From contig NC_043001.1 of the NCBI RefSeq assembly GCF_006345805.1, positions 87,854,001 through 87,918,000 of the forward strand: a stretch of 64,000 nucleotides of DNA, in the 5' to 3' direction. This document shows, in pieces, positions 5,304-60,217 of this stretch. Origin of the DNA: Octopus sinensis. Taxonomy: Eukaryota. Below the pieces are notes generated by a model. That model was not told the origin of the DNA and searched no databases. It saw only the letters and a list, made by a program, of their open reading frames with translations. A program made the position numbers and the translations under genes. Position 1 is the stretch's first letter, and each line of letters begins with the position of its first letter.

Positions 5304-5624
5304 TACCTTACCAAGCATATATGTAACTCTGAGCAGGTCAATGTGATAGCATTGACGTTTCACCACTAGCATGACAAGCGACATTATTTTTTTCTCTAAT
5401 TTTGAGAGCTGAGTCACCTGGAGAAGAGTTCCAACTAGATGAAATCTTTGAGCAATTTAAATGGACAAAACTCTCATACTCATTGGCTAAAGAGTGTCAG
5501 CATAAGGGCCCCCACATGTAATGACCTAGATGTGGCTCAGCTCCTTAAGTAATAAGTTAAGGACTGATGCGGGTTTCTTCTCTGAAAAACTGCTGCTCAG
5601 CTCTCTTGAGAGTTTCTTACCACT

Positions 5625-5659
5625 GTATGTGTGTGTGTGTATATATATATGTATACATA

Positions 5660-5690
<31 letters not shown>

Positions 5691-5776
5691 GTGTGTACAT
5701 ATATATATATGTGTATATATATATATATATATATGTGTATATATATATATATATATATGGTATATATATATATATA

Positions 5777-5821
<45 letters not shown>

Positions 5822-6009
5822 TGTATATATATATGTGTATTATATATGTATGTATATATATATGTGTATATATATATATGTATATATATGTATGTATGTA
5901 TATATATATGTGTATATATATGTATATATATATATAATATGTATGTATGTGTATATATATATATGTATATATATGTATATGTATATATATGTGTATATAT
6001 ATATGTATA

Positions 6010-6048
<39 letters not shown>

Positions 6049-6331
6049 ATATATATATATATATATGTATATGTATATATATGTATATATATATGTGTAT
6101 ATATATGTATGTATATATATATGTGTATATATATGTATGTGTATATATATGTATGTATGTATATATATATGTGTATATATATGTATATATATATATATAT
6201 GTATGTATGTGTATATATATAATGTATATATATGTATATGTATATATATGTGTATAATATATATGTATATATATGTGTATATATATATATTATATATATA
6301 TGTGTGTATATATATATATATATATTATATA

Positions 6332-6373
<42 letters not shown>

Positions 6374-6937
6374 GTGTAATATATATGTATATATATGTGT
6401 GTATATATGTGTATATATATGTATATATATGTATATATATGTGTATATATATATATGTATATATATGTGTATATATATGTGTATATATATATGTGTATAT
6501 ATATGTGTATATATATATGTGTATATATATATGTGTATATATATATGTGTATATATATATATGTATATATATATATGTGTATATATATGTGTATATATAT
6601 ATGTGTGTATATATATATGTGTATATATATATGTGTGTATATATATATGTGTATATATATATGTGTGTATATATATATGTGTATATATATGTGTGTATAT
6701 ATATGTGTATATATATATGTGTGTATATATATATGTGTATATATATGTGTATATATATATATGTGTATATATATGTGTATATATATATATGTGTATATAT
6801 ATATATATGTGTATATATATATATGTGTATATATATGTGTATATATATATATATATATGTGGTGTATATATATGTGTATATATATATATATATGTGGTGT
6901 GTATATATATATATATATTATATATATATATATATAC
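5625..6937. repeat. Compound (AT)n/(GT)n microsatellite, about 1.3 kb
   Basis: Near-continuous alternating purine-pyrimidine sequence; source of the YI/CV-rich pseudo-ORFs. Confidence 0.97.
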
Positions 6938-7006
6938 AATGAATGGCTGTGCCCCAGCATGGCCACAGCTCATTAGCTGAAACTGGAAAAATCAAAAATC
7001 AAAATC

Positions 7007-7151
7007 ATATGTGTATATATATATGTGTATATATATATATGTGTATATATATATATATATATTATATATTATATATAATATATATATATGTAATATATAT
7101 ATGTGTATTATATATATATATGTGTGTGTATATATATGGTGTGTATATATA

Positions 7152-7185
<34 letters not shown>

Positions 7186-7410
7186 ATATGTATGTGTATA
7201 TATATATATGTGTGTATATATATTATGTGTGTATATATATATATATATATATTGTGTATATATATATATATGTGTATATATGTGTAATATATATATATAT
7301 ATACGTGTATATATATATATGTGTATATATATATATATATATATACGTGTATATATATAGATATATAAGTGTATAGATATATATGTGTATAGATATATAT
7401 ATAATATATA
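7007..7410. repeat. Compound (AT)n/(GT)n microsatellite, about 0.4 kb
   Basis: Same composition, separated from the larger array by a SINE 3' tail (about 6938-7005). Confidence 0.95.
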
Positions 7411-7491
7411 TATCATCGTCATTTAGCGTCCGTTTTCCATGCTAGCATCGGTTGGACGGTTCAACTGGGGTCTGTGAAGCCAGAAGGCTTA

Positions 7492-8163: not shown

Positions 8164-9279
8164 TTTTTTTCAAAACACCCATTTCTTCTATTTATTGAGG
8201 TACTTATATAACAGATGCTATCAAATACTTCTCATGATCATTTGGGGTATTTAAGAGACTTCATTACCTGGGTACATTTACTACATATGAAATCTTTCTT
8301 CTTTATCAGCCTGTTTGATCTATTACCTTTTCCTTTTGTTTGTGCCAAATACATGGTCTAGAGTTCCTTGATTACTCTTTCTGTATAGAGAGTATGGCTA
8401 CTTTCCAGCTTGTAGTTGTATTCTTTATATTTACTTTTATGTTAAATATGACCTTTACAATTCTAGACTTGGCTTCCACATTTGGAACTTTTTTCAAATT
8501 CTTTGTCTGATATGGTTATAAACAATTAGATTACCAAGCTCCCATGAGTAACCAATCCTGATCTCCTTTGTCATGGAGAATATAATAAGCAGGACTCAAA
8601 GTTTCAGAGAGACAACTACATGCACGGTAAATTTCTCACTGGGCTTGTTAAAAACTCACTTTGCTGACAGTGCTTTGCAGAGCTCTGACAAGTTATTCCT
8701 CTACCTCCAGTTCTTTTAGTGACAATCAACTGTGGAATATTGTACATTGTTGGAGGCCTTTTTTTTTAACTCAATAAATGCTTAATATAATGGTTTAGTT
8801 GCCTAGCTAAGAAGAAGAATCAGTGATTCTACATCTTGGCAAGATAAAGGACTATTATAGGTTGCAAAATGTACAACCCACGGAGCAGTTGAAAGTAGTA
8901 ACTGCAAGCAAGAACTGGCTCAGAGTAGAAGGAGCTTTTTACTTCTCTCGTATGGGACAACTTCTCCAATGCCAGTATCAATATAAAATACATCCAGTAC
9001 ACTCTATAAAACTTGCTCAACACAACAAAGTTGTCTGGTTTTTCTGTTGCTGTGTGTGTGTGTGTGCAAGATATAGAAGATTATGGTGAGTGGTAATCCA
9101 TCTAACCATGCCAGCATGCAAAAATGGATGTAAAATGATGATAGAAAGAAGTGGTCATTGTATATGACTCAAGCATGGCTAATTAGTTAAGAAATTTGCT
9201 TTGCAATCATAACTCTGGTCAGTAATTCTTGATGTTGATGTGGTCACTACAGTTTGGGGTTTTTTTTTCCTGCTTTTAG

Positions 9280-9369
9280 GTTTGGTATTGGTCGTTTCAC
9301 AACAGAAGCAGAGATAGACTATACTGTTGAGAAATGTAACAAGTTTGTGAAGGAGCTGAGGGAAATGAG
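9280..9369 (+). CDS. NFS1: NFS1 penultimate coding exon (90 bp)
   Basis: ttttag|G TTT...ATG AG|gtgagt; (R)FGIGRFTTEAEIDYTVEKCNKFVKELREM(S). Missed by the ORF track. Confidence 0.97.
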
Positions 9370-9538
9370 GTGAGTGGTTTGCAAATTTCTCCAAATTATT
9401 TTTATAGAAAGGATGGGTGGGTACTTTCGACCTAATTCCATTGCTATGATGGGATTATAATGGGGTAGTTTGTGGAGCAGATAAATGTTGTTTGTTAGTC
9501 ACTAAAAGAACTAAATATCTCTTATTCTATCATTTCAG

Positions 9539-9602
9539 CCCTCTCTGGGAAATGGTACAGGAAGGAATTGATTTGAAAACTATTAAGTGGACCCAACATT
9601 GA
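9539..9602 (+). CDS. NFS1: NFS1 last coding exon
   Basis: tttcag|C CCT...CAT TGA; (S)PLWEMVQEGIDLKTIKWTQH*, the conserved NFS1 C-terminus. Confidence 0.97.
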
Positions 9603-10171
9603 ATGATATTGTGGTAGTATTGAACTGTACCCACCAACTGTTACTTCCAGGCCTGTCTGTGCAAAGTCGATGTGTCTGGCCCCTAATATTTGCAAGAAAC
9701 ATACAAGTCTGACCTCTAATTGACAATATACACTCCTATGTAGCGTTATTGCATAATATTTAATAATAATAATAATAATCTATTTTTAAAGATATTTTGA
9801 GCTTATTATTTTTTATTATTGAATGTTGGACAAAATGTCTAAGAGTATTACTGTATTTATTCCAGCTCTTCATATCCTGAGTTTGAATAATTTGGGGTTT
9901 TGGGTTTTATTGCTATGAAAGAAATATAGCTGGTACTGTGTGATACCATTCAGTTCTCTGCATATTTATGACAAAGTTTCAATCCTCTGTTGAAGTATGT
10001 TTTTTTTTTTTTCATGTGTCTTTCAGATCTTTTTCCCAATCTATACATTCTAAAGATTGTAAAGTGTAAATGCATCAAAATTAGTTGTAAGTTTTGTGCT
10101 GATCACTTACCAAAGTTGCCATATAATCATGGGTAAAAATAATTTGATTTGTAATTTTCTAAAAAGTTTTA

Positions 10172-12501: not shown

Positions 12502-12900
12502 CGATGGGCTTCTTTCAGTTTCTGTCTACCAAATCCACTCACAAAGCTTTGGTTGGCCCGAGGCTATAGTAGAAGACACTTGCCCAAGGTGCCACACAGT
12601 AGGACTGAACCTGGAACCATGTGGTTGGTAAGCAAGCTACTTAACACATAGCCATGATACAAAAAATTGTCACAGATCCTGAAAAAGGACAACAATAATT
12701 TCACATTGAATCAATATAGACAACACAACTGAATCAACATTTCAGTACTATGCCACTTATGTATGGTCTGCCCAAATCCCCCCAAAATATGTTCCATTAA
12801 AATTTTTCATCAGATGCCAGAGCTCAACATGACATCTACTGAGCATATTACTTGTAGATATAAACCAACACAGTTTTTGATGCTATACCAAGAATTCTAC
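11920..12900 (+). mobile_element. Penelope-like element RT remnant, split by a SINE
   Basis: NKGLDFTTNIKQVLYLDMTAPFEEIHLKIPK...LEKVLEKA before the SINE; KLSQILKK...MYGLPK (YGLPK at 12762-12776) after it. Multiple stops and frameshifts. Confidence 0.7.
12276..12655 (-). mobile_element. tRNA-derived SINE family B (CORE-like segment, internal microsatellite spacer)
   Basis: Minus strand has a tRNA-like head, then GGCACCTTGGGCAAGTGTCTTCTACTATAGCC, a (TG)n spacer and a GTAAAAGAGTAAAAG-type tail. Confidence 0.85.
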
Positions 12901-14867: not shown

Positions 14868-16398
14868 TAGCATCCGCTTTCCATGCTAGCATGGGTTGGA
14901 CGGTTCAACTGGGGTCTGGGAAGCCAGAAGGCTGCACCAGGCCCAGTCTGATCTGGCAATGTTTCTACGGCTGGATGCCCTTCCTAACGCCAACCACTCC
15001 ATGAGTGTAGTGGGTGCTTTTTATGTGCCACCGGCACAGGTGCAAGACGAGTCTGGCAAACGGCCACGATCAGATGGTGCTTTTTATGTGCCACCGGCAC
15101 GGGGGCCAGGCGAGGCTGGCAATGGCCATGAGGGGATGGTGCTTTTTACATGCCACCGGCACGAGGCCAGTTGGGGCGGCGCTGGCAACGTCCACGTTTG
15201 GATGGTTCTCTTACGTGCCACCGGCACTGGTATCTCAGCTGCAATTTCCATTGATCGATTTGAATTCTGATTCTCACTTGCCTCAACAGGTCTTCATAAG
15301 TAGAGTTTTGTGTCCCAAGAAGGGAAGGTATGCATAAGTGGACTGGCTACATCCCGTGTAGAAGGCCACGGGTTATGGTCTCACTTGTCCTGCCAGGTCT
15401 TCTCACGCACAGCATACTTCCAGAGGTCTCGGTCTCTAGTCATTTCCTCAGTGAGACCTAAAGTTCGAAGGTCGTGCTTCACCACCTCGTTCCAGGTTTT
15501 CCTGGGTCTGCCTCTTCCACAGGTTCCCTCAACTGCTAGGGTGTGGCACTTTTTCACACAACTATCTTCATCTATTCTCACCACATGACCATACCAGCGC
15601 AAACGTCTCTCTTGCACACCACATCTGATGCTTCTTAGGTCCAGCTTTTCTCTCAAGGTACTTACACTCTGTCGAGTATGAACACTGACATTACACATCC
15701 ATCGGAGCATACTGGTTTCATTTCTTGCGAGCTTACGCATATCCTCAGCAGTCACGGCCCATGTTTCACTGCCATGTAGCATGGCTGTTCGTACACACGC
15801 GTCATACAATCTGCCTTTTACTCTGAGCGAGAGGCCTTTTGTCACCAGCAGAGGTAAGAGCTCTCTGAACTTTGCCCAAGCTATTCTTACTCTAGCAGTT
15901 ACACTTTCAGCACACCCACCCCCGCTACTGACTTGGTCACCTAGGTAACGGAAGCTATCAACTATTTCTAGTTTTTCTCCCTGGAAAGTGACAGAAGTTG
16001 GTCTCAGAGCATTTTCAGTGTTTATTGTTCCTGAGCATCTGCCACATACAAAAACTATCTTCTTAGTTAGCCTTCCTTTGACATTGCTGCACCTCTTATC
16101 TGTCCATAGCTTACACTTGGTGTATCTTATAGAGTTTCTACCTACACCTTTTCTACAGATCGAGCAGGGCCATCTACCTGAAGGCATTTGTGATTTGTCT
16201 ACCTTCCTACTTATTAGGACCTTGGTTTTAGCTAGAATGACTCTAAGGCCCTTTGATTCTAATCCTTGCTTCCACACCTGAAACTTCTCCTCCAGTTCTG
16301 ATAATGACTCAGCAATTAGAGCAAGGTCATCAGCATAGAGGAGCTCCCAAGGGCATCCTGTCTTGAATTCCTCCGTTATTGCCTGGAGGACTATGATA
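14868..16398 (-). mobile_element. 5'-truncated RTE-clade LINE with an open reading frame from the RT core to the stop, plus 3' UTR
   Basis: Frame extends upstream of the listed ORF: IVLQAITEEFKTGCPWELLYADDLALIAES (YADD at 16326-16337), then FRYLGD, MLHGSETW, RRLRWYGHV, GRGRPRKTW; stop at 15381; 3' UTR with about 60-bp subrepeats. Confidence 0.92.
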
Positions 16399-19719: not shown

Positions 19720-20009
19720 CAAAAGGTTTGTGGTATTTAATTACATCTCTTCATGTTTTGGATCCAGCTTTTGGAATCAAATTTACCTTCCTTCCTTCAC
19801 AGGTTAATAAAATAATTAATCAGGAGTTGAGGGCTCAAGGATGAAAGTAAGAAGCAGTTATTTAATGGAAGGGAATGTAATCTGTTAAATTGACTCTAGT
19901 ACTTCACAAGTATTTATTTTATTAACCTGTGAAGGAAGAAAGGCAAACTTGATCCCAAAAGCTGAATGCAAAATATTAAGAGATGTAAGTAAATATCACA
20001 AGCCTTTTG
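19720..20009. repeat. Inverted repeat: 96-bp arms, 98-bp spacer
   Basis: 19720-19815 versus the reverse complement of 19914-20009 shows 11 mismatches by hand count. Confidence 0.8.
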
Positions 20010-20249
20010 AGTAACTCTGCTGATCCTGTCAACCATTACTCTTCATCTGACCACAACGACAACAACAACAACAATAATAATAATCCTTTCTACTATAGGA
20101 AAAAGGCCTGAACTTTGAGGGGAGGGGGAAAGTTGATTAAAATGACCCGAGTGCTCAACTGGTACTTATTTTATTGACCTAAAAAAGATTGAAAGGTGAA
20201 GTCAACTACACTATTTGTCACAGCTGACTAGTTTGCAAAAGCAGTTGGG

Positions 20250-20735
20250 ACATGAAGACCAGTTGGAAGCTTGCTATGCAATAAAGTTTTGTGTTAAACT
20301 AGGCAAAAATACTACAGAAGCTTATGAAATGTTCCAGACTGTTTTTAGATTAACTTGTATGAACTGAGCTTCTGCTTTTCACAGGTACAAGAGACCTGGC
20401 AAATCAAGTCCACTGGGAAAATCACGATGATCCTCTTTTTTAACAGCAAGGGTGTCATCTACATCCACTGGGTTCCCTCTGGTCAGAAACTCAACAAAGA
20501 ATACTTTGTGGAGGCTTTGAAAAAGTTCAGAAAGAGATTTCATTGCAAAAGGCTAGAGCATCTGTGCCAGGGCAATGAACCAGGCTACAATTCCATCCTT
20601 GTAACTAATTACTTGACAGAGATGTGCACCAGAACTATCCCTCACCCTCCCTACAGTCCAGTCCTTGTTCTCTGTGACTTTTGGATCTCCTCCAAGCTGA
20701 AGGAGAATATGAAGGAGGCTGTGACACCTTCACTT
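20250..20735 (+). mobile_element. Internally deleted mariner transposase remnant
   Basis: N-terminal YAIKFCVKLGKNTTEAYEMFQTVF...ASAFHRYKR abuts C-terminal KSTGKITMILFFNSKGVIYIHWVPSGQ...IPHPPYSPVLVLCDFW (YSPDLAP-like). Confidence 0.85.
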
Positions 20736-20886
20736 GAGAACTAATCAAATATAAATTAACAAATGTAATTTGGAAAGTTTGAAACCTAGGTCCTAGGTTA
20801 TTCACATCTGGGTTGTACATATATTTAATGTTCTTCCTACAGGTAAGATGAAATTTTTTGTTTGCTGCTCACAAACATATTTGCCA

Positions 20887-20924
<38 letters not shown>

Positions 20925-20985
20925 TGTTCGCTTTCCAGCACATGATCTCAGATCAAATCACTTGCTATGCAAGTACATCTTTGTA

Positions 20986-21016
<31 letters not shown>

Positions 21017-21296
21017 ATGTACTGTTCTGTGATGGTAAGATTAACAAAAAAATTTCTCCATCTATATAGTTTGGTAAAACAAACATGAGAAATAGCACTC
21101 AAAATGCACAAGTATATTAAAGTTTTTTATATTATTAAATGGCAGAAAGTTACAAAAGCTGCACAAGGGCTGAGATTCAAGAGTGCATAGCGCTTAAAAT
21201 TTGGCAAGTGCTCTTGCTGAGCCACTTTTGTAACTTAGTGTTTTATCAAAAATAATAGATATGTAATATATCATCATCATCAGCAGCAGCAGCAGC

Positions 21297-21670
21297 AGTG
21301 GAGGCGCAATGGCCCAATGGTTAGGGCAGCGGACTCGCGGTTTCGATTCCCAGACTGGGCATTGTGTGTGTTTATTGAGCAAAAACGCCTAAAGCTCCAC
21401 AAGGCTCCAGCAGGGGGGGGTGGTGACCCCTGTTGTACTCTTTTGCTCCAACTTTCTCTCATTCTTTCTTCCAGTTTCTTGTCCCTGACTTCCTACGCAA
21501 CTGCTGAGCCTGGATGCGCATTCATCCATCTGTCAATGCTCTCGGTGTCGGGGGTTGACCTGCTTTCTCTTCTGCAGGTCTTCCGAATAGCAAAGGACCA
21601 CATTTCGGACTTCTCCCATCTTGCGAGCTCTGATACGAAGACCGCTTCGCTCAACAGCAACAACAGCAAC
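21297..21670 (+). mobile_element. tRNA-headed SINE ending in (CAA)n
   Basis: A-box-like TGGCCCAATGGTTAG, B-box-like GTTTCGATTCC, GC-rich body, CAACAGCAACAAC tail. Confidence 0.65.
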
Positions 21671-22364
21671 ATCATTGTCAACATCATTATCATTTAACAT
21701 TTTTCATACTGGCTTGGGTTGCACTATGTGTGTGTGTGTTTCTGAGTGGGATTAGTGTCATTACATCACATTCATCACTATCATGCTTATCCTTTTGATC
21801 AGGATTATTCACTTTTGAATGCTGGTATGAGTCAGATGTGTGAGTTTTATAACTTAATCTCACTCTTGTCTTTCTTGTGTCATCTAGCTAAAAAAAAAAA
21901 AGGTTGATTTATACACCAAGATGACTTTGAAGGACCAAAAATTCCATGTGAAGGATAATGATGAAGTTTGAACGTTTACACTACATGTTTACATTATATA
22001 CTGGGTTAACTTTTAAGCCAATTTTCCTCTGTAATGGTTATCAGCTCCCTTATTAACTAATACCTGCCTTTTGTTCAGAAGTTATCATTCATTTACATCA
22101 CATGTTCATAACCATCTCATTCATGCTTACTTTATTTTTCTCCATCTGCCATAAGTCTTCCACATGCAATGCTCTATGTCTCACTATCATGTAGCATTGT
22201 ATTTTTCATACATTTTTGTACAATTTGACATTTAAACTGAAACGGAAAAAACATTTTTTGCCAAACAAATTAAACGGTTCCTCTAGCGTCTTCAAGTCTT
22301 TTCTTTCTCTAGCTAATACACTATCACCAGAATCATCAGAAACAGTGATTGTTTGTGGAAGGAC

Positions 22365-22603
22365 AGCAATCGCCCATGCATACTAGCCTCCCCTCTCCAC
22401 GACACCAGTGTTACCCAAGGGAAAGGCAAAAGCCGATACAGCTCGGCACCTGTGACGTCGCAACTCATTTCTACAGCTGAGTGAACTGGAGCAACATGAA
22501 ATAAAGTGTCTTGCTCAAGAACACAACACGCAGCCTGGTCCGGGATTCGAGCTCACAACCTCACGATCGGAAGCTCGATGCTCTAATCACTGAGCTATGC
22601 GCC
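22365..22603 (-). mobile_element. tRNA-derived SINE family D (CORE-like)
   Basis: Minus strand GGCGCATAGCTCAGTGATTAGAGC...CTCGAATCCCGG then GTGTTCTTGAGCAAGACACTTTATTTC. Related copies at about 29070-29340, 58740-58890 and 61820-62060. Confidence 0.75.
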
Positions 22604-22729
22604 GTCTGTGCATTTAAGATACTGAAAATGATAAATATCTCCCATCAGTCACCAGGGTTACCATTTAAGCTTAAATTCAATGATGTTAAATGTTAAAAAA
22701 AAAAGTAAAAAATGGTTGTGGTGGGGTGC

Positions 22730-22932
22730 AGGTATGGCCATGTGGTTCTGAAGCTCACTGTACAACCTTGTGGTTTTGGGTTCAGTCTCACTGCACAGCA
22801 CCTTCGGTAAATGTCTTTTACTCAGGTTGACCAAAGCTTGTGAATGAATTTGGTAAACAGAAACTGTGTGGAAGACCATCATATCTGTCTGTCTGTCTGT
22901 TTTCTTATCTATATGTTTGTCAGTCTTTTTCC

Positions 22933-22980
<48 letters not shown>

Positions 22981-23348
22981 TGATCATCTATCTATCTATC
23001 TATCTCTCTATCTCTCTATCTATCTATCTATCTATCTATATATCTATCTATCTATCTATCTATCTGTCTATCTCTGTCTGTCTCTCTGTCTATCTGTCTG
23101 TCTGTAGTTTTGTATTTGTGTTTGTCCCATTATTGCTTGACAATCAGTGTTAGGTTGTTTACATACTGTAACTTAGTGATTCATCAAAAGAGATTGATAT
23201 AATAAGAACCAGTGTTAAAAAAGAAAGAAAGAAAGAAAGAAACATAGTACTGCAGCTGATTTCTTCAACTAAACCTTTTGAAGTAGTGCCCCAGCAAGGC
23301 CATAGTCCACTGACTGAAACAAATAAAAGATGAAAGAAAAGATAAAGG
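22730..23348 (+). mobile_element. SINE family B with (TATC)n/(TCTG)n expansion in the spacer
   Basis: Head 22730-22880, tetranucleotide array about 22885-23105, tail to 23348. Confidence 0.75.
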
Positions 23349-23659
23349 TAATCATCATCATCATCATCATTTAGTGTCTATTTTCCATGCTGGCATGTGT
23401 TGGCTGGCTCAGCAGGAGCTTGCAAGTCAGTGGATTGTACTGAGTTCCAATGTCTGCTTTGGTATGGTTTCTATGGCAGGATGCCCTTCCTAATGCCAAG
23501 CCTTCCGTCAGCAGTGATGGACAACATGCAAGTGTGCTGCCACCATGTACTGGAACCCTAACAATTCAGGTAAATAAATAAGTGAATAGATAAATGATAA
23601 ATTTCTTTTAGAATTCAAGACAAATGTCCATGCACAAAATGTTAGCCTGTACATCATTT

Positions 23660-24097
23660 GGATCTTTTCGGTTTGAACGGCAGTTTTTTCTAGCGGTGTC
23701 ATATGAAATTGTCACCCGTAATTATGACCCTAGTATCGATCTATTGCATTTCAATCTGTTTTAGGGTTAGGGTTAGTTAGGGTTAGTTAGGGTTAGGGGT
23801 GGGGGGAAGGGTTTCTTTTTTCTTCACAAATGTAAATAAACCCAATCTGTTTCTTAAACGAGGGACATATTCATATGGCACAGAATGTTTTTTTACCTCA
23901 ATAGACGTCATTGATTGGTTGAAATTGCAGAAATTGAAGAAAAACAACAACAAATATCTTACAAAGTACAGAATTTTCTCAATAAAGCCAAAAGAAAAAG
24001 ATGTTTTATAAACACATTCTACCAGTATATGAAGTTTAAAAGTGTTTAGTTATGTGGAAATTATTTTTTAAAACTGTCATTCAAACTGAAAAGATCC
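23660..24097. mobile_element. MITE with GG-starting 28-bp TIRs, 8-bp TSD and internal TTAGGG repeats (Merlin-like)
   Basis: TSD CATCATTT at 23652-23659 and 24098-24105; TIRs GGATCTTTTCGGTTTGAACGGCAGTTTT and GGATCTTTTCAGTTTGAATGACAGTTTT; TTAGGG/TTAG run at about 23761-23798. Confidence 0.85.
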
Positions 24098-24710
24098 CAT
24101 CATTTCATAGCATATCAATATATATCTCTTCAGAGTTTATTTCCAAACTATTTTCTTACCTTTTGCTGCAGACTACTAATTCACTTCTGTTGATAATCTT
24201 TATGAATTGGGACTCTAATATCATACTTGGTCAACTATTGTTTCTCTTGATGATTGACAAGAGAACCTGTCAAAAATGTGTTGGCTGTCAATTGATGTGA
24301 TTAGGTATTTCATATGACAAAACAATACTTAATGATGTAACCCATTCTGTGTTTCTTTTATAAAAAAAAAATCTCTAAGCCCATTTTATGTTTAAAACAA
24401 AAATAGAATTTTCTTATCTCATGATGGACATTTGTTCTTGATTCAGGAGGAGACAGCAACTGGAAGAATAGAAAAAGACCAGAAACAAAGATTTAGGGAA
24501 ATGGAGAGTTACAGGAGTAAATTCTAGAAGGAAACAGCTGAAAGATTAAAAATAAAGCTACCAGGAAATCAGGTAGCAGTTGCAGGAACTGAATTAGAAC
24601 AAAGTACAAAAATTGTGGTCAAGGAACTTGAGAGCAATAAAAAGAAAACTGAACAAATTTACCTGGAATTGTAAGTGCAATTAAATAAGAAAGATCCAAT
24701 ATCAGCAGTT

Positions 24711-25466
24711 ATGAACTTGAATGTAATATCCACACTAATTTGGTTGGCACTATTTTGCCACATTATAAAACAAGGTGATAGCATTATTGACATGAATATT
24801 CATGAACTTCAGTTCATTTCTGACCACCTGACCATTAGAGAGTGTGCAATGTTAGTGAGAGCACTACAAATAAACACATGGGAATTACCTAAGAACCTTA
24901 ATAGAAGAAGAGTCAGCAAAACTAAACCTCCAGTTCCATGTTTAATCCTGTTACTCAATTATGATCAGAATAAGGGAAGGCACAAGACCTTCCATGACCT
25001 CTCACGTCGACTGAATCAAATTGGTAGGAAAGATCTAGCAGACAAGCTCTCTCAAATGATATTCCACAAGAAGGCAGAGGACATTAAGAAAAATTACCTT
25101 AATGATCCCTTCAGGAAGCTAATACACCCAACGCCAATTTTTGTGAAAATTGTTACTGGGGAAGGGGTGAGTGAACAGAAGGGAGAACACATGCCACATT
25201 ATGATACAAGGCCTAAAGTTAAGGAAACCAACTTTTGGAGTACAGTAATAATGATGTTTTCTGTAGTGACAGTGTTGAGCCTTTTATTCATGGTCACATC
25301 ACTCTGTGTCACTGGATGTCCTGTTTACATCAGGTCATTTTACCGAAGCTGTGCACCTCAATATCTTGTTAATTGTACCTCTAAATGTTACAATGTTATT
25401 TGTAACATTAAAGATTCGAAAGCTGAAAAATCTTATGCACTACCAAGAAGAAAAGAAGCAAATTAA
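24711..25466 (+). CDS. Intronless signal peptide + death-domain-like + transmembrane protein (TMDD1-like, 251 aa)
   Basis: Uninterrupted non-repetitive ORF. Hydrophobic N-terminus MNLNVISTLIWLALFCHII; ISDHLTIRECAMLVRAL, VPCLILLLNYD and TFHDLSRRLNQIGRKDLADKLS recall TMDD1-family motifs; TM segment FWSTVIMMFSVVTVLSLLFMVTSLCV; Cys-rich tail. Confidence 0.8.
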   Translation: MNLNVISTLIWLALFCHIIKQGDSIIDMNIHELQFISDHLTIRECAMLVRALQINTWELPKNLNRRRVSKTKPPVPCLILLLNYDQNKGRHKTFHDLSRRLNQIGRKDLADKLSQMIFHKKAEDIKKNYLNDPFRKLIHPTPIFVKIVTGEGVSEQKGEHMPHYDTRPKVKETNFWSTVIMMFSVVTVLSLLFMVTSLCVTGCPVYIRSFYRSCAPQYLVNCTSKCYNVICNIKDSKAEKSYALPRRKEAN

Positions 25467-25736
25467 TAATTTTTTTTTAAATGTAATAATTTTATATACA
25501 TACGTATATATTTATGTGTATATATATATATATACATGCCACTTTCTCTCCCACCATTTCTGTCTCTTTATCTATCTATCTGCCTGTCTGTTCATGTCAG
25601 TGTACGAGATAAATGCATATGAACTTAGTATAAACTTAATTTACTTGAGAAATTTAATCACTTCAAGTATGCAACTAACAAGCATTCGGTATCATGATTT
25701 TATGTTTTATGTGAAGAATGGACTTAACATATAACT

Positions 25737-34130: not shown

Positions 34131-34500
34131 TTTCTTGTTAGATATGTTGTATACGGTGTAGTGTTAATGTTGCGCATCAGGGTGGTGTAATGCAATGTAG
34201 GATAGTAGAAAGAAGTGTATTGCTATGTTGTGTAGAATAATGTTATCTTAAGTAACGAAGTATACTGTTGTGGAATATAGTGTAGTGAACATGTGTCGGT
34301 CGAATGCCGGAAGTTAAGTGGAGTTATGCACTCTCCAGTAACGGGAGAACAAAATATATATCTCCAACATGGCCATATACATTGTTGGAATAATGTGAAG
34401 TTTTTTTTCCTACCAACATTTCTTTGGTTTGTTATGTCTTATTAATCACCTTTATCGACTTGAACAGAATTGCGCCTGCTTCTGTGTAAATAGTTGAAAG

Positions 34501-34590
34501 ATGACGGCTGTTGAACTAAAAGACCAAGGCAATCGGCTGTTTGCCATGAAGAAATTCGAGGCTGCCATAAGCTGTTACACGAAAGCCATT
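34501..34590 (+). CDS. STUB1: E3 ubiquitin ligase CHIP, first coding exon (TPR1)
   Basis: MTAVELKDQGNRLFAMKKFEAAISCYTKAI|gtaagt; in-frame TGA at 34495-34497 fixes the start codon. Confidence 0.95.
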
Positions 34591-34829
34591 GTAAGTTGCT
34601 ACAACATAGGAACACACATTCAACCACTCGCTTTATATTCTCTGCTGATTTTCTTTCGACTTTCTCATTCTTTTCTCCGGTTATCATTTGCTTGTAGCTC
34701 TGTGAATGGCTATTGGGTGAATTATTATTAATTAATGACTCGTGGTAGGGATAATGGAGTGGTGTCTGTGTGTGTTTCAATCTGTTTATCTTCTAGATAC
34801 GCTTCTCTGTGTTACTGAATGTATATGTT

Positions 34830-46084: not shown

Positions 46085-46460
46085 CTCTTTTACTGTTTTA
46101 CTTGTTTCAGTCATTTGACTGTGACCATGCTGGAGCACCGCAGTTAGTTGAGCAAATCGTTCCCAGGACTTATTCTTTGTAAGACTAGTACTTATTCTAT
46201 CGGTCTCTTTTGCCAAATTGCTAAGTTACGGGGACGTAAACACACCAGCATCGGTTGTCTAGTAATGTTGGGTGGACAAACACACACACACATATACGAC
46301 AGGCTTCTTTCAGTTTCTGTCTACCAAATCCACTCACAAGGCTTTGGTCGGTCCAAGGCTATAGTAGAAGACACTTGCCCAAGGTGCCACGCAGTGGGAC
46401 TGAACCCGGAACCATGTGGTTCGTAAGCAAGCTACTTACCACACAACCACTCCTACACCT
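46085..46460 (-). mobile_element. SINE family B, near full length
   Basis: Closest-to-consensus copy, with most CpGs intact. Confidence 0.88.
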
Positions 46461-59926: not shown

Positions 59927-60217
59927 TTTTATTTTTTTACTTGTAAGCCTAGTACTTATTCTATTGGTCTCTTTTGCCAAACTGCTAAGTTACAGAGATG
60001 TAAATGCACCAACATTGGTTGTCAAGTGATGTTGGAGGGACATACACACACACACACACACATACAATGGGCTTCTTTCAGTTTCCATCTACCAAATCCA
60101 TTCACAAAGCTTTGGTCAGCCTGAGGCTATAGTAGAAGACACTTGCCCAAGATGCCATGCAGTGGGACTGAACCTGGAACCATGTGGTTGGTAAGCAAGC
60201 TACTTACCACACAGCCA
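59927..60217 (-). mobile_element. SINE family B copy
   Basis: Matches the copy at 46085. Confidence 0.8.

What the first reader, a model, noticed from the sequence alone, without database searches (positions are those of the whole stretch)
24711..25466. Intronless type-I membrane protein with a death-domain-like module apparently on the extracellular side (TMDD1-like)
Seen: a 251-codon unique ORF with an N-terminal hydrophobic segment, a helical charged domain, one TM segment and a tail with several Cys residues. Known: death domains normally act in the cytoplasm; the poorly studied TMDD1 family has this inverted layout, and the motifs HLT..EC, C...L..Y/W and L...L.QIGR.DLAD.L recall it (from memory). 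Inference: an uncharacterised surface or luminal homotypic-interaction receptor, possibly palmitoylated. This is the best candidate for an undescribed function in the window.
Basis: partly seen in the sequence, partly recalled or inferred. Interest (0 to 1): 0.75.

Follow-up and report, generated by a model that had tools for sequence, protein, structure and literature searches.

The report
Octopus TMDD1, a likely sperm-fertilization protein
This single-exon octopus gene encodes the cephalopod member of TMDD1, a membrane protein with a death domain on the outside of the cell that 2026 preprints showed is essential for sperm-egg fusion in fish and mice, so it is a real and correctly recognised gene but not a new kind of protein.

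Summary
The 251-codon ORF at 24711-25466 (+) is real, single-copy in the ~2.7 Gb Octopus sinensis genome, syntenic in two other octopod genomes (also found in a third octopod sequence) and under purifying selection (dN/dS 0.17-0.35 overall; death domain 0.07-0.27). It has a signal-peptide-like leader, a ~110-aa divergent death domain with a near-invariant Cys pair (126/127 family representatives), a variable linker, one TM helix and a Cys-rich tail. It hits the gastropod protein A0A2T7PE00 at E=2e-17; a May 2026 preprint names that protein mollusc TMDD1 and links it reciprocally to human TMDD1. Its claim of an uncharacterised function is out of date: vertebrate TMDD1 is a core subunit of the sperm SPARK fertilization complex, predicted to bind DCST1/DCST2, and knockouts are male-sterile. 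This genome encodes intact DCST1-like and DCST2-like genes. The most likely role is a sperm-membrane partner of DCST1/2, but expression and binding were not testable here. I did not reach vertebrate TMDD1 directly. Small new points: a conserved mollusc-specific Cys-rich tail, family members in insects and a tick, and a possibly missing O. sinensis annotation. Verdict: new member of a known kind, moderate-to-low interest.

The parts
24711..25466 (+). Complete single-exon CDS of the octopus TMDD1 orthologue (251 aa plus TAA stop)
   Evidence: ORF listing and translation. 93%, 84% and 64% identical orthologues in O. bimaculoides, an unidentified octopod (SRR11869385) and Argonauta hians. Single copy in the genome. 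dN/dS 0.17-0.35 for the diverged pairs, Fisher p=1.4e-22 for window vs Argonauta.
24711..24782 (+). Predicted signal peptide, residues 1-24 (MNLN / VISTLIWLALFCHII / KQGDS), with cleavage predicted after S24 (G at -3, S at -1)
   Evidence: Hydrophobic window of 2.4. Across the family the conserved domain starts at a median residue of 20 (IQR 17-24), and the residue before it is usually C, A or S. The leader sequence evolves fast but stays hydrophobic. No SignalP-type predictor was available, so the cleavage site is inferred.
24783..25115 (+). Exoplasmic divergent death domain, residues 25-135
   Evidence: Pfam PF00531 at E=1.8e-4 and 22.0 bits against a 22.6 cut-off for the octopus protein. 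27 of 56 family members hit at E<0.01, with a best E-value of 8e-8. The family profile hits NRADD, Fas, ankyrin and THOC1 death domains in PDB. The domain-only AF2 model has pLDDT 90.4 and pTM 0.78. The Foldseek top hits are nearly all death-fold domains, with probability up to 0.96 and TM-score up to 0.65, but none has E<=1e-3. dN/dS is 0.07-0.27.
24843..24845 (+). Codon of Cys45, first half of the family-specific Cys pair
   Evidence: Cys in 127 of 128 representatives covering the column. Both Cys are present in 126 of 127. The preprint describes a disulfide unique to TMDD1 death domains. That C45 and C77 are the same pair is inferred.
24939..24941 (+). Codon of Cys77, second half of the Cys pair
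   Evidence: Cys in 139 of 139 representatives covering the column.
25116..25232 (+). Variable juxtamembrane linker, residues 136-174
   Evidence: AF2 pLDDT of 47-62. dN/dS of 0.5-1.4. Length and sequence vary across the family.
25233..25310 (+). Single transmembrane helix, residues 175-200 (FWSTVIMMFSVVTVLSLLFMVTSLCV)
   Evidence: Kyte-Doolittle 19-residue window of 2.34. AF2 helix at 173-201. Family-wide median net charge is -1 before the TM and +2.5 after it, and 82% of members are more positive after it.
25311..25463 (+). Cytoplasmic Cys-rich tail, residues 201-251 (C203, C214, C222, C226, C231, with C199 at the membrane edge)
   Evidence: Every Cys is invariant in the four octopods. dN/dS for the TM plus tail is 0.15-0.27. 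A related CP..AP..C..C..C tail occurs in 25 of 106 representatives, including Patella, Aplysia and Sinanodonta. Its function has not been tested.
24519..24710 (+). Upstream flank colinear with O. bimaculoides, probably 5'UTR and/or core promoter
   Evidence: A blastn block of 94% identity runs from 24519 to 25718, and colinearity with O. bimaculoides breaks upstream of 24519. The third octopod contig is colinear back to about 24090. No transcript evidence was available.

Best explanation
[quoted passage not shown] It is most likely made in male germ cells. The leader would insert it into the ER and then be cleaved. This leaves a type-I membrane protein whose disulfide-braced death domain faces the acrosomal lumen or the cell exterior. 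There the death domain would bind the ectodomains of the multipass proteins DCST1 and DCST2. That would form the ancient core of the sperm fertilization machinery, which in vertebrates is extended into the SPARK complex and is needed for stable sperm-egg adhesion and fusion. Shown here: the gene is real and constrained, it has the architecture and topology signals described, it has a death fold, it belongs to the family, and DCST1-like and DCST2-like genes are present. Taken from the literature: the vertebrate function and the predicted binding to DCST1/2. Inferred: that the octopus protein has the same partners and role.
For: Identity:
- phmmer from the octopus protein hits P0039 at E=2.1e-17 over residues 12-214, and BLASTP gives 5e-25.
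- P0039 is UniProt A0A2T7PE00. The preprint names this protein Pomacea TMDD1 and links it to human TMDD1 P0DPE3 by reciprocal PSI-BLAST round-2 hits and a tree.

Defining features, all met:
- Leader followed directly by the domain.
- Death-domain homology.
- Family-specific Cys pair in 126 of 127 representatives.
- TM after the domain, with the positive-inside rule obeyed.

Further support:
- The zebrafish tmdd1 gRNA printed in the preprint translates to ALQQIGR, which matches octopus RLNQIGR.
- All 140 phmmer hits carry the domain near the N-terminus, and none is a canonical death-domain protein with a C-terminal domain.
- The gene is functional: purifying selection, the CDS has no indels while the flanks do, and the CDS is one of only two blocks in the region conserved to Argonauta.
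- Synteny with CHIP/STUB1 holds in O. bimaculoides and Argonauta.
- Partners exist in the same genome: intact DCST2-like (758 aa) and DCST1-like (682 aa) ORFs, each scoring about 176 bits to PF07782. They are identical to XP_029646105.1 and XP_029643469.1.
- Vertebrate function: co-IP with TMEM81 and SPACA6, co-depletion with DCST1/2, and male sterility of zebrafish and mouse knockouts. A second preprint calls TMDD1 an acrosomal membrane protein essential for fertilization.
Against: - There is no expression or proteomic evidence for octopus, so testis or sperm specificity is untested.
- I could not compare the octopus protein with a vertebrate TMDD1 sequence directly. Both profile searches failed to reach vertebrates, so that link is transitive through a preprint that has not been peer reviewed.
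- The TMDD1-DCST1/2 contact in vertebrates is itself an AlphaFold prediction (ipTM 0.64) supported by co-IP and co-depletion, not a solved structure.
- No multimer prediction could be run here for the octopus proteins.
- The octopus Pfam Death score (22.0) is just under the gathering threshold (22.6).
- No Foldseek hit reaches E<=1e-3, and RMSDs are 5-8 A, so the death fold is divergent.
- The strongly conserved Cys-rich tail has no counterpart in the 'weakly conserved' vertebrate tail and could reflect a different or additional role.
- IZUMO1, SPACA6 and TMEM81 are restricted to vertebrates according to the preprint, so the octopus complex cannot be SPARK as defined.
Confidence: 0.62

Rival explanations
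1. The protein is a true TMDD1-family member, but in cephalopods it does something other than fertilization. It could be a surface or luminal adhesion or oligomerisation receptor in another tissue such as neural, immune or secretory tissue. The mollusc-specific Cys-rich tail would then provide lineage-specific signalling or membrane anchoring.
For: There are no expression data. The Cys-rich tail is as constrained as the death domain (dN/dS 0.15-0.27). It is shared among molluscs but not described for vertebrates. No invertebrate TMDD1 has been tested functionally: the preprint tested only FAM187/spe-40 in C. elegans.
Against: The gene is single-copy, so no paralogue is free to diverge. The ectodomain, which is the part predicted to bind DCST1/2, is the most conserved region across phyla. 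DCST1/2 partners are present. Those proteins act in fertilization in both flies and nematodes according to the preprint.
Confidence: 0.25
2. It is a membrane protein with a convergent or unrelated helical-bundle ectodomain. In that case it would not be a real death-domain or TMDD1 homologue, and the resemblance would be superficial.
For: The octopus Pfam Death score is just below the gathering cut-off. No Foldseek hit reaches E<=1e-3, and RMSDs are 5-8 A. I obtained no direct hit to a vertebrate protein.
Against: 27 of 56 family members hit PF00531 independently, with a best E-value of 8e-8, and Pomacea scores 27.1 bits, above the cut-off. The family profile hits several unrelated solved death domains (NRADD, Fas, ankyrin, THOC1), aligned over the same helices. 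About 40 of the top 50 Foldseek hits are death-fold domains in two independent models. The published reciprocal PSI-BLAST connects the Pomacea member to human TMDD1 before any other death-domain family.
Confidence: 0.05
3. It is a chance ORF, a pseudogene, a retrocopy or a transposon-derived ORF with no function of its own.
For: It is an intronless ORF in an AT-rich, repeat-dense region. No transcript evidence is available. The exact protein is absent from the 15-billion-protein collection, although other O. sinensis RefSeq proteins are present.
Against: No simulated window gave an ORF this long. It is single-copy, whereas the TE ORF at 15381-16187 has at least 143 near-identical copies. It is intact, indel-free and syntenic as far as Argonauta, at dS of about 1.4 with dN/dS of 0.17. 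The Patella orthologue is also intronless, so this is the ancestral gene structure in molluscs rather than a recent retrocopy.
Confidence: 0.02

Closest known systems
[quoted passage not shown]
   Same: The order of parts is the same: signal peptide, exoplasmic death domain, linker, one TM, cytoplasmic tail. The death domain has a conserved Cys pair where TMDD1 has its unique disulfide. The L-x-Q-I-G-R motif is shared with zebrafish. DCST1 and DCST2 partners are encoded in the same genome.
   Different: - The protein is more compact: domain 25-135 and TM 175-200, against 26-167 and 215-244 in human.
- The tail is Cys-rich and strongly conserved among molluscs, whereas the vertebrate tail is described as weakly conserved.
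- The CDS is a single exon, whereas zebrafish tmdd1 has at least 3 exons.
- The vertebrate-only SPARK subunits (IZUMO1, SPACA6, TMEM81 and others) are said to be absent outside vertebrates, so any octopus complex would be a smaller DCST-centred one.
- The function in octopus is untested.
Pomacea canaliculata TMDD1 (UniProt A0A2T7PE00 / PVD31637.1), plus the uncharacterised mollusc proteins of Patella, Physella, Aplysia, Sinanodonta and O. bimaculoides (LOC106879591)
   Same: These are direct sequence homologues over nearly the full length: E=2e-17 to Pomacea and 93% identity to O. bimaculoides. They share the architecture, and most mollusc members share the Cys-rich juxtamembrane tail.
   Different: None has been studied experimentally, and all but Pomacea are labelled only 'uncharacterized' or 'hypothetical'. 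The O. sinensis protein itself was not found in the protein collection.
Canonical intracellular death domains of death receptors and adaptors (Fas, FADD, TNFR1, DR3, TRADD, RIPK1, NGFR/NRADD, ankyrins, UNC5)
   Same: They share the six-helix death fold. The family profile aligns to helices 4-6 of NRADD, Fas and ankyrin death domains, and these are the top Foldseek hits (TM-score up to 0.65).
   Different: Those domains are cytoplasmic, lack the disulfide and assemble homotypically into signalling oligomers. Here the domain lies on the other side of the membrane, directly after a signal peptide. It has a short helix 3 with a long variable loop (residues 54-76). In vertebrates it is predicted to bind a non-death-domain partner, DCST1/2.

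Membership tests
TMDD1 family | N-terminal signal peptide immediately followed by the conserved domain | tested here: met
   There is a hydrophobic leader at residues 5-19, with small residues at -3 and -1 (G22, S24). Across the family the domain begins at a median residue of 20. This rests on heuristics only, because no SignalP-type predictor was available.
TMDD1 family | Death domain located N-terminal to the single TM, that is exoplasmic | tested here: met
   The domain spans 25-135 and the TM spans 175-200. The positive-inside rule holds family-wide, with median charge -1 before the TM, +2.5 after it, and 82% of members consistent. Even an uncleaved leader would leave the domain exoplasmic. 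No experimental topology is available.
TMDD1 family | Conserved Cys pair forming a disulfide unique to TMDD1 death domains | tested here: met
   C45 and C77 are both present in 126 of 127 representatives. The preprint reports a TMDD1-specific disulfide. The positional equivalence to the vertebrate pair and the bond itself are inferred.
TMDD1 family | Significant sequence similarity to accepted TMDD1 members | tested here: met
   E=2.1e-17 by phmmer and 5e-25 by BLASTP to Pomacea A0A2T7PE00, which the preprint designates TMDD1.
TMDD1 family | Direct or reciprocal similarity to vertebrate TMDD1 (human P0DPE3) | tested here: inconclusive
   No vertebrate sequence was reachable. Profile searches returned only invertebrates, and the paper's supplements are not held. 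The only direct vertebrate anchor is the zebrafish gRNA, which encodes ALQQIGR. The link rests on the preprint's PSI-BLAST and tree.
TMDD1 family | Testis or sperm expression and a requirement for fertilization | not testable with these tools
   No RNA-seq or proteomic resource was available. The Logan contig L009 is colinear with the genome and says nothing about transcription.
TMDD1 family | Physical association with DCST1/DCST2 | not testable with these tools
   Only the presence of partners could be shown: intact DCST1-like and DCST2-like genes in the same genome. No multimer prediction tool was available.
Death domain superfamily (Pfam PF00531 / death fold) | Sequence match to the Death profile | tested here: met
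   The octopus protein scores 22.0 bits (E=1.8e-4) against a cut-off of 22.6, which is borderline. 27 of 56 family members match at E<0.01, with a best of 8e-8, and Pomacea scores 27.1 bits, above the cut-off. The family profile hits NRADD at 8e-4, plus Fas, ankyrin and THOC1 death domains.
Death domain superfamily (Pfam PF00531 / death fold) | Six-helix antiparallel bundle similar to solved death-fold structures | tested here: inconclusive
   The AF2 domain model has pLDDT 90.4. About 40 of the top 50 Foldseek PDB hits are DD, DED, PYD or CARD domains, with probability up to 0.96 and TM-score up to 0.65. But no E-value is <=1e-3, RMSDs are 5-8 A, and helix 3 is vestigial. This is consistent with a divergent death fold but not decisive on its own.

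The most novel reading that the evidence does not exclude
Molluscs, including cephalopods, may use an ancestral fertilization module of DCST1/2 plus TMDD1, without the vertebrate IZUMO1-type adhesion arm. In this module the mollusc-specific, strongly conserved Cys-rich cytoplasmic tail of TMDD1 (CP..AP..C..C..C) would add a function absent from vertebrates, such as multi-site palmitoylation or metal binding that anchors or gates the complex in the acrosomal membrane. A HAP2-like gene in the same genome would mean both candidate fusion systems coexist in octopus. If so, this locus would give the first molecular handle on gamete fusion in cephalopods.
Probability: 0.25. Interest if true: 0.6.

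Novelty: new member of a known kind. Interest (0 to 1): 0.35.

Why it matters
TMDD1 is the only known family with a death domain outside the cell, and it has just been shown to be essential for vertebrate fertilization. An intact, constrained, single-copy orthologue in octopus, alongside intact DCST1 and DCST2 genes, supports the proposal that DCST1/2 plus TMDD1 is an ancient bilaterian sperm module. It also names concrete candidates for cephalopod fertilization, about which almost nothing molecular is known. There are practical points too. The gene seems to be missing from the O. sinensis protein set and is labelled 'uncharacterized' elsewhere, so it can now be annotated. The family also has members in insects and ticks, where a fertility role could be tested genetically. 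The mollusc-specific conserved Cys-rich tail marks a difference from vertebrate TMDD1 that may be worth studying.

Tried and rejected
1. I tried to reach vertebrate TMDD1 directly. The word-indexed profile search with the 56-sequence family alignment returned only 6 invertebrate proteins.
2. A second profile used a subgroup I guessed might be deuterostome. It turned out to include a tick and reached no vertebrate. The preprint's supplements are not held.
3. I tried Foldseek as a decisive fold test. Neither the full-length model nor the domain-only model gave E<=1e-3, so I use only the make-up of the hit list and the TM-scores.
4. I tried the 1597-nt Logan contig L009 as transcript evidence. 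It is colinear with genomic DNA through about 620 nt of upstream flank, so it shows neither splicing nor expression. Neither the SRA run nor the LOC identifier appears in the literature library.
5. I tried to get the gene structure of the Pomacea orthologue, but it is not on record. Patella was used instead.
6. Single-sequence phmmer against PDB gave only a spurious LptG match at E=1.7.
7. Weak Pfam hits to DUF2135 and Mtp (E 0.04-0.5) were dismissed as noise.
8. I considered the overlapping 113-aa ORF at 25393-25734. It is low-complexity (YIYVYIY) and not conserved in frame, so I rejected it.
9. I considered whether the other long ORFs in the window are genes. Those at 5567-6980 are artefacts of a (TA)n array, and 15381-16187(-) is a transposon ORF.
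10. I considered an upstream coding exon. This is unlikely: an in-frame stop lies 12 codons upstream, the first ATG starts the leader in all Octopus orthologues, and no other block near the CDS is conserved to Argonauta.
Full report
OBSERVATION

The window is a piece of the Octopus sinensis genome, G000:C5:87854001-87918000, in a 2.72 Gb assembly. The species follows from two other ORFs in the genome that are identical to O. sinensis RefSeq proteins.

At 24711-25466 on the + strand there is an ATG-to-TAA ORF of 251 codons. It begins at the first ATG of its open frame. An in-frame stop lies 12 codons upstream, and there is a G at -3. In 60 simulated windows with the same dinucleotide statistics, the longest ATG-ORF averaged 125 codons and never exceeded 203.

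The other long ORFs in the real window are not genes. Those at 5567-6980 come from a 1.8-kb (TA)n array. The one at 15381-16187(-) belongs to a young transposon family with at least 143 copies at 94-96% identity. The ORF in question, by contrast, is single-copy, with the next-best genomic matches at E>2.

IS IT A GENE?

Orthologues exist in O. bimaculoides (LOC106879591, 93% identity), in an unidentified octopod from run SRR11869385 (84%) and in Argonauta hians (64%).

In O. bimaculoides and Argonauta the gene sits in the same place, upstream of the TPR/U-box gene CHIP/STUB1. In O. bimaculoides it also lies downstream of an Aminotran_5 gene. At the DNA level only two blocks of this region are conserved as far as Argonauta: the CDS (24735-25415) and CHIP exon 1 (34298-34641).

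Nei-Gojobori estimates of dN/dS:
- Whole CDS: 0.17-0.20 against Argonauta (dS about 1.4) and 0.28-0.35 against the third octopod.
- Death domain: 0.07-0.27.
- TM plus tail: 0.15-0.27.
- Linker (residues 136-172): 0.5-1.4.

The excess of synonymous change is highly significant (Fisher p=1.4e-22 for window vs Argonauta, 2.4e-5 for window vs SRR). The CDS has no indels against the third octopod, while the 620 nt upstream have 77 gap columns.

The closest pair, window vs O. bimaculoides, has too few changes to be informative (dN/dS 0.55, p=0.15).

I conclude that the ORF is a functional protein-coding gene. No expression data could be obtained.

ANATOMY

- Residues 1-24 form a signal-peptide-like leader: a short n-region, the hydrophobic stretch VISTLIWLALFCHII, then KQGDS with G at -3 and S at -1.
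- Residues 25-135 form a helical domain. AF2 gives pLDDT above 90 over residues 30-130 in the full-length model. A domain-only model built from 116 homologues reaches pLDDT 90.4 and pTM 0.78.
- Residues 136-174 form a poorly conserved, low-confidence linker.
- Residues 175-200 form one strongly hydrophobic TM helix.
- Residues 201-251 form a tail. Together with C199 at the membrane edge it has six Cys, all invariant in the four octopods.
- The only N-x-S/T sequon (N221) lies in the tail.

FAMILY

An exhaustive phmmer scan of 1.84 billion representatives found 140 proteins at E<=1e-3 and 77 at E<=1e-10. Most are 200-290 aa, and in all of them the match starts near the N-terminus. None is a canonical protein with a C-terminal death domain.

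Named members come from several groups:
- Molluscs: Patella, Pomacea, Physella, Aplysia, Plakobranchus, Sinanodonta.
- Insects: Trichogramma, Onthophagus, Aphis.
- A tick: Ornithodoros.

Aligned to a domain HMM, the family shows the following:
- A near-invariant Cys pair. C45 is Cys in 127 of 128 representatives and C77 in 139 of 139. Both are present in 126 of 127.
- A conserved mature N-terminus (T/I-x-D-x-N).
- The L-x-Q-I-G-R-x-D-L-A motif.
- Domain onset at a median residue of 20.
- A TM after the domain in 106 of 143 representatives.
- The positive-inside rule: median net charge is -1 before the TM and +2.5 after it, and 82% of members are more positive after it.

These features place the domain on the exoplasmic side. 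That would hold even if the leader were an uncleaved signal anchor.

IS THE DOMAIN A DEATH DOMAIN?

- Pfam PF00531 matches the octopus protein at E=1.8e-4 and 22.0 bits, just under the 22.6 cut-off.
- It matches 27 of 56 family members independently at E<0.01, with a best of 8e-8. Pomacea scores 27.1 bits, above the cut-off.
- A family profile searched against PDB sequences finds NRADD (8e-4), Fas, ankyrin-G/B and THOC1 death domains, aligned over the same C-terminal helices.
- Foldseek gives no E-value at or below 1e-3 for either model, and RMSDs are 5-8 A. However, about 40 of the top 50 hits are death-fold domains (Fas, FADD, DR3, TRADD, RIPK1, ankyrin, UNC5 death domains, plus DEDs and PYDs). 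Probabilities reach 0.96 and target-normalised TM-scores 0.65.

I read this as a genuine but divergent death domain. Helix 3 is vestigial and is replaced by a long variable loop (residues 54-76).

WHAT IS KNOWN

A full-text search for TMDD1 found the May 2026 preprint 'The SPARK complex forms the molecular basis of vertebrate fertilization' (bioRxiv 10.64898/2026.05.13.724128). It reports the following:
- That domain carries a disulfide found in no other death domain.
- TMDD1 co-purifies with TMEM81 and SPACA6 from zebrafish and mouse sperm.
- AlphaFold predicts it to form a trimer with DCST1/DCST2 (ipTM 0.64).
- It is co-depleted with DCST1/2 and TMEM81 in mutants.
- Its loss makes male zebrafish and mice sterile. 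Zebrafish mutant sperm fail to adhere stably to the egg, and mouse mutant sperm fail to fuse.
- PSI-BLAST extends the family to lancelets, molluscs, annelids and tardigrades.
- The preprint names Pomacea canaliculata A0A2T7PE00 as TMDD1, with reciprocal round-2 hits to human P0DPE3 before any other death-domain family, supported by a tree.
- It proposes that DCST1/2, FAM187A and TMDD1 form the ancient core of the sperm machinery.

A companion preprint calls TMDD1 an acrosomal membrane protein essential for fertilization.

THE LINK TO THE OCTOPUS PROTEIN

A0A2T7PE00 is my protein P0039. The octopus protein hits it at E=2.1e-17 over residues 12-214, and BLASTP gives 5e-25. All architectural features that define TMDD1 are met, as listed in the membership table.

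There is one small independent anchor to a vertebrate. The zebrafish tmdd1 guide RNA printed in the preprint translates in one frame to ALQQIGR, which matches octopus RLNQIGR.

I could not align the octopus protein with a vertebrate TMDD1 directly. Both word-indexed profile searches returned only invertebrates, and no supplementary sequences are held. That part of the membership test is therefore transitive, and it rests on a preprint.

MECHANISM

Commitment: the protein is the octopus TMDD1 orthologue (about 0.9). Its most likely role is as a sperm-membrane partner of DCST1/2 in gamete adhesion and fusion (about 0.6).

Shown here: the gene, the constraint on it, the topology signals, the death fold, and family membership. 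Also shown is that the same genome encodes intact DCST2-like (758 aa) and DCST1-like (682 aa) proteins. Each scores about 176 bits to PF07782, has a C-terminal Cys-rich finger, and is identical to XP_029646105.1 or XP_029643469.1.

From the literature: the vertebrate function and the predicted DCST1/2 contact.

Inferred: that the octopus protein shares them.

Because IZUMO1, SPACA6 and TMEM81 are reported to be vertebrate-only, an octopus complex would be a smaller DCST-centred assembly, not SPARK as defined.

DIFFERENCES FROM VERTEBRATE TMDD1

- The octopus protein is more compact.
- Its CDS is one exon, as in the limpet Patella, whereas zebrafish tmdd1 has at least three exons.
- Its cytoplasmic tail is Cys-rich and as constrained as the ectodomain.
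- A related CP..AP..C..C..C tail occurs in 25 of 106 representatives, including gastropods and a bivalve. The vertebrate tail is called weakly conserved.

VERDICT

Its functional framing, as an uncharacterised homotypic receptor with an undescribed function, has been overtaken by 2026 work that already includes molluscs.

This is a new member of a known kind. Interest is moderate to low (0.35). It rests on the candidate cephalopod fertilization module, the mollusc-specific tail, the wider arthropod distribution, and a probable annotation gap in O. sinensis.

Noticed in passing
G000:C12:55080499-55081785 (-), locus L017; second hit at G000:C12:55100653-55101432 (-): The octopus genome has a match to Pfam HAP2-GCS1 (PF10699) at 82 bits, well above the 27.4 cut-off. 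It lies inside an open frame reported as 7489 aa. The 6-kb stretch I fetched has no N runs and is open for at least 1381 aa, starting with a leader-like MKLQTLLSTYVLTVLLQ. A weaker hit (52 bits) lies 20 kb away. So a HAP2-like gene with a giant exon coexists with DCST1/2 and TMDD1 in this species.
   Followed up: partly
G000:C15:~6062194 (L010 358-2634) and G000:C12:~35851330 (L011 322-2370): The DCST2-like (758 aa) and DCST1-like (682 aa) genes of O. sinensis are each a single uninterrupted ORF, identical to the RefSeq proteins. All three candidate sperm-complex genes (DCST1, DCST2, TMDD1) therefore have intronless coding regions in octopus. Four further DC_STAMP fragments with stop codons lie on small contigs.
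   Followed up: partly
window 24711-25466: The exact O. sinensis protein is not in the 15-billion-protein collection, although O. sinensis RefSeq DCST1/2 proteins are. The gene may be unannotated, or annotated differently, in O. sinensis. The Argonauta record is flagged 'partial', but it has an in-frame Met at its third residue that aligns with the leader.
   Followed up: partly
family members P0030, P0032, P0163, P0083: TMDD1-like proteins occur in insects (Trichogramma pretiosum XP_014235988.1, Onthophagus taurus XP_022916544.1, Aphis gossypii LOC114126299) and in a tick (Ornithodoros turicata LOC135398814). The text of the preprint lists only lancelets, molluscs, annelids and tardigrades. 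The insect members have a basic-then-acidic tail instead of the Cys-rich one.
   Followed up: partly
family member P0011: One member is filed in EukProt under the apicomplexan Siedleckia nematoides, a gut parasite of polychaetes. It is most likely a host (annelid) transcript contaminating that transcriptome.
   Followed up: no
window 15381-16187 (-): A 268-aa ORF with no Pfam hit belongs to a very abundant, young repeat family. At least 143 copies at 94-96% protein identity were scored from 84,046 first-look candidates. Some copies lie in open frames of about 1060 aa, so this is probably a fragment of an active or recently active transposable element.
   Followed up: partly
window 5640-7413: A 1.8-kb (TA)n microsatellite (about 890 copies, 80% matches) explains the GC dip to 0.21 and a cluster of spurious overlapping ORFs of 190-270 aa on both strands.
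   Followed up: yes
window 19951-24518: Colinearity with O. bimaculoides jumps from window 19950 to 24519, so about 4.6 kb is present here and absent at that position in O. bimaculoides. The break ends only 192 bp upstream of the TMDD1 start codon. The third octopod contig shares at least 24090-24518 with the window, so this may be a deletion in O. bimaculoides rather than an insertion here.
   Followed up: no
window ~8844-9606 and ~34298-34641 onward: These are the neighbouring genes, placed by colinearity with O. bimaculoides. Upstream is the last exon of an Aminotran_5-domain gene. About 9 kb downstream on the same strand is the first exon of CHIP/STUB1 (TPR plus U-box). CHIP exon 1 is 83% identical to Argonauta at the DNA level.
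   Followed up: partly
window-wide, e.g. 12507-12654, 46298-46454, 60070-60217: Short interspersed repeats of about 150-300 bp recur at a dozen or more places in the window and in the O. bimaculoides locus, at 70-92% identity.
   Followed up: no
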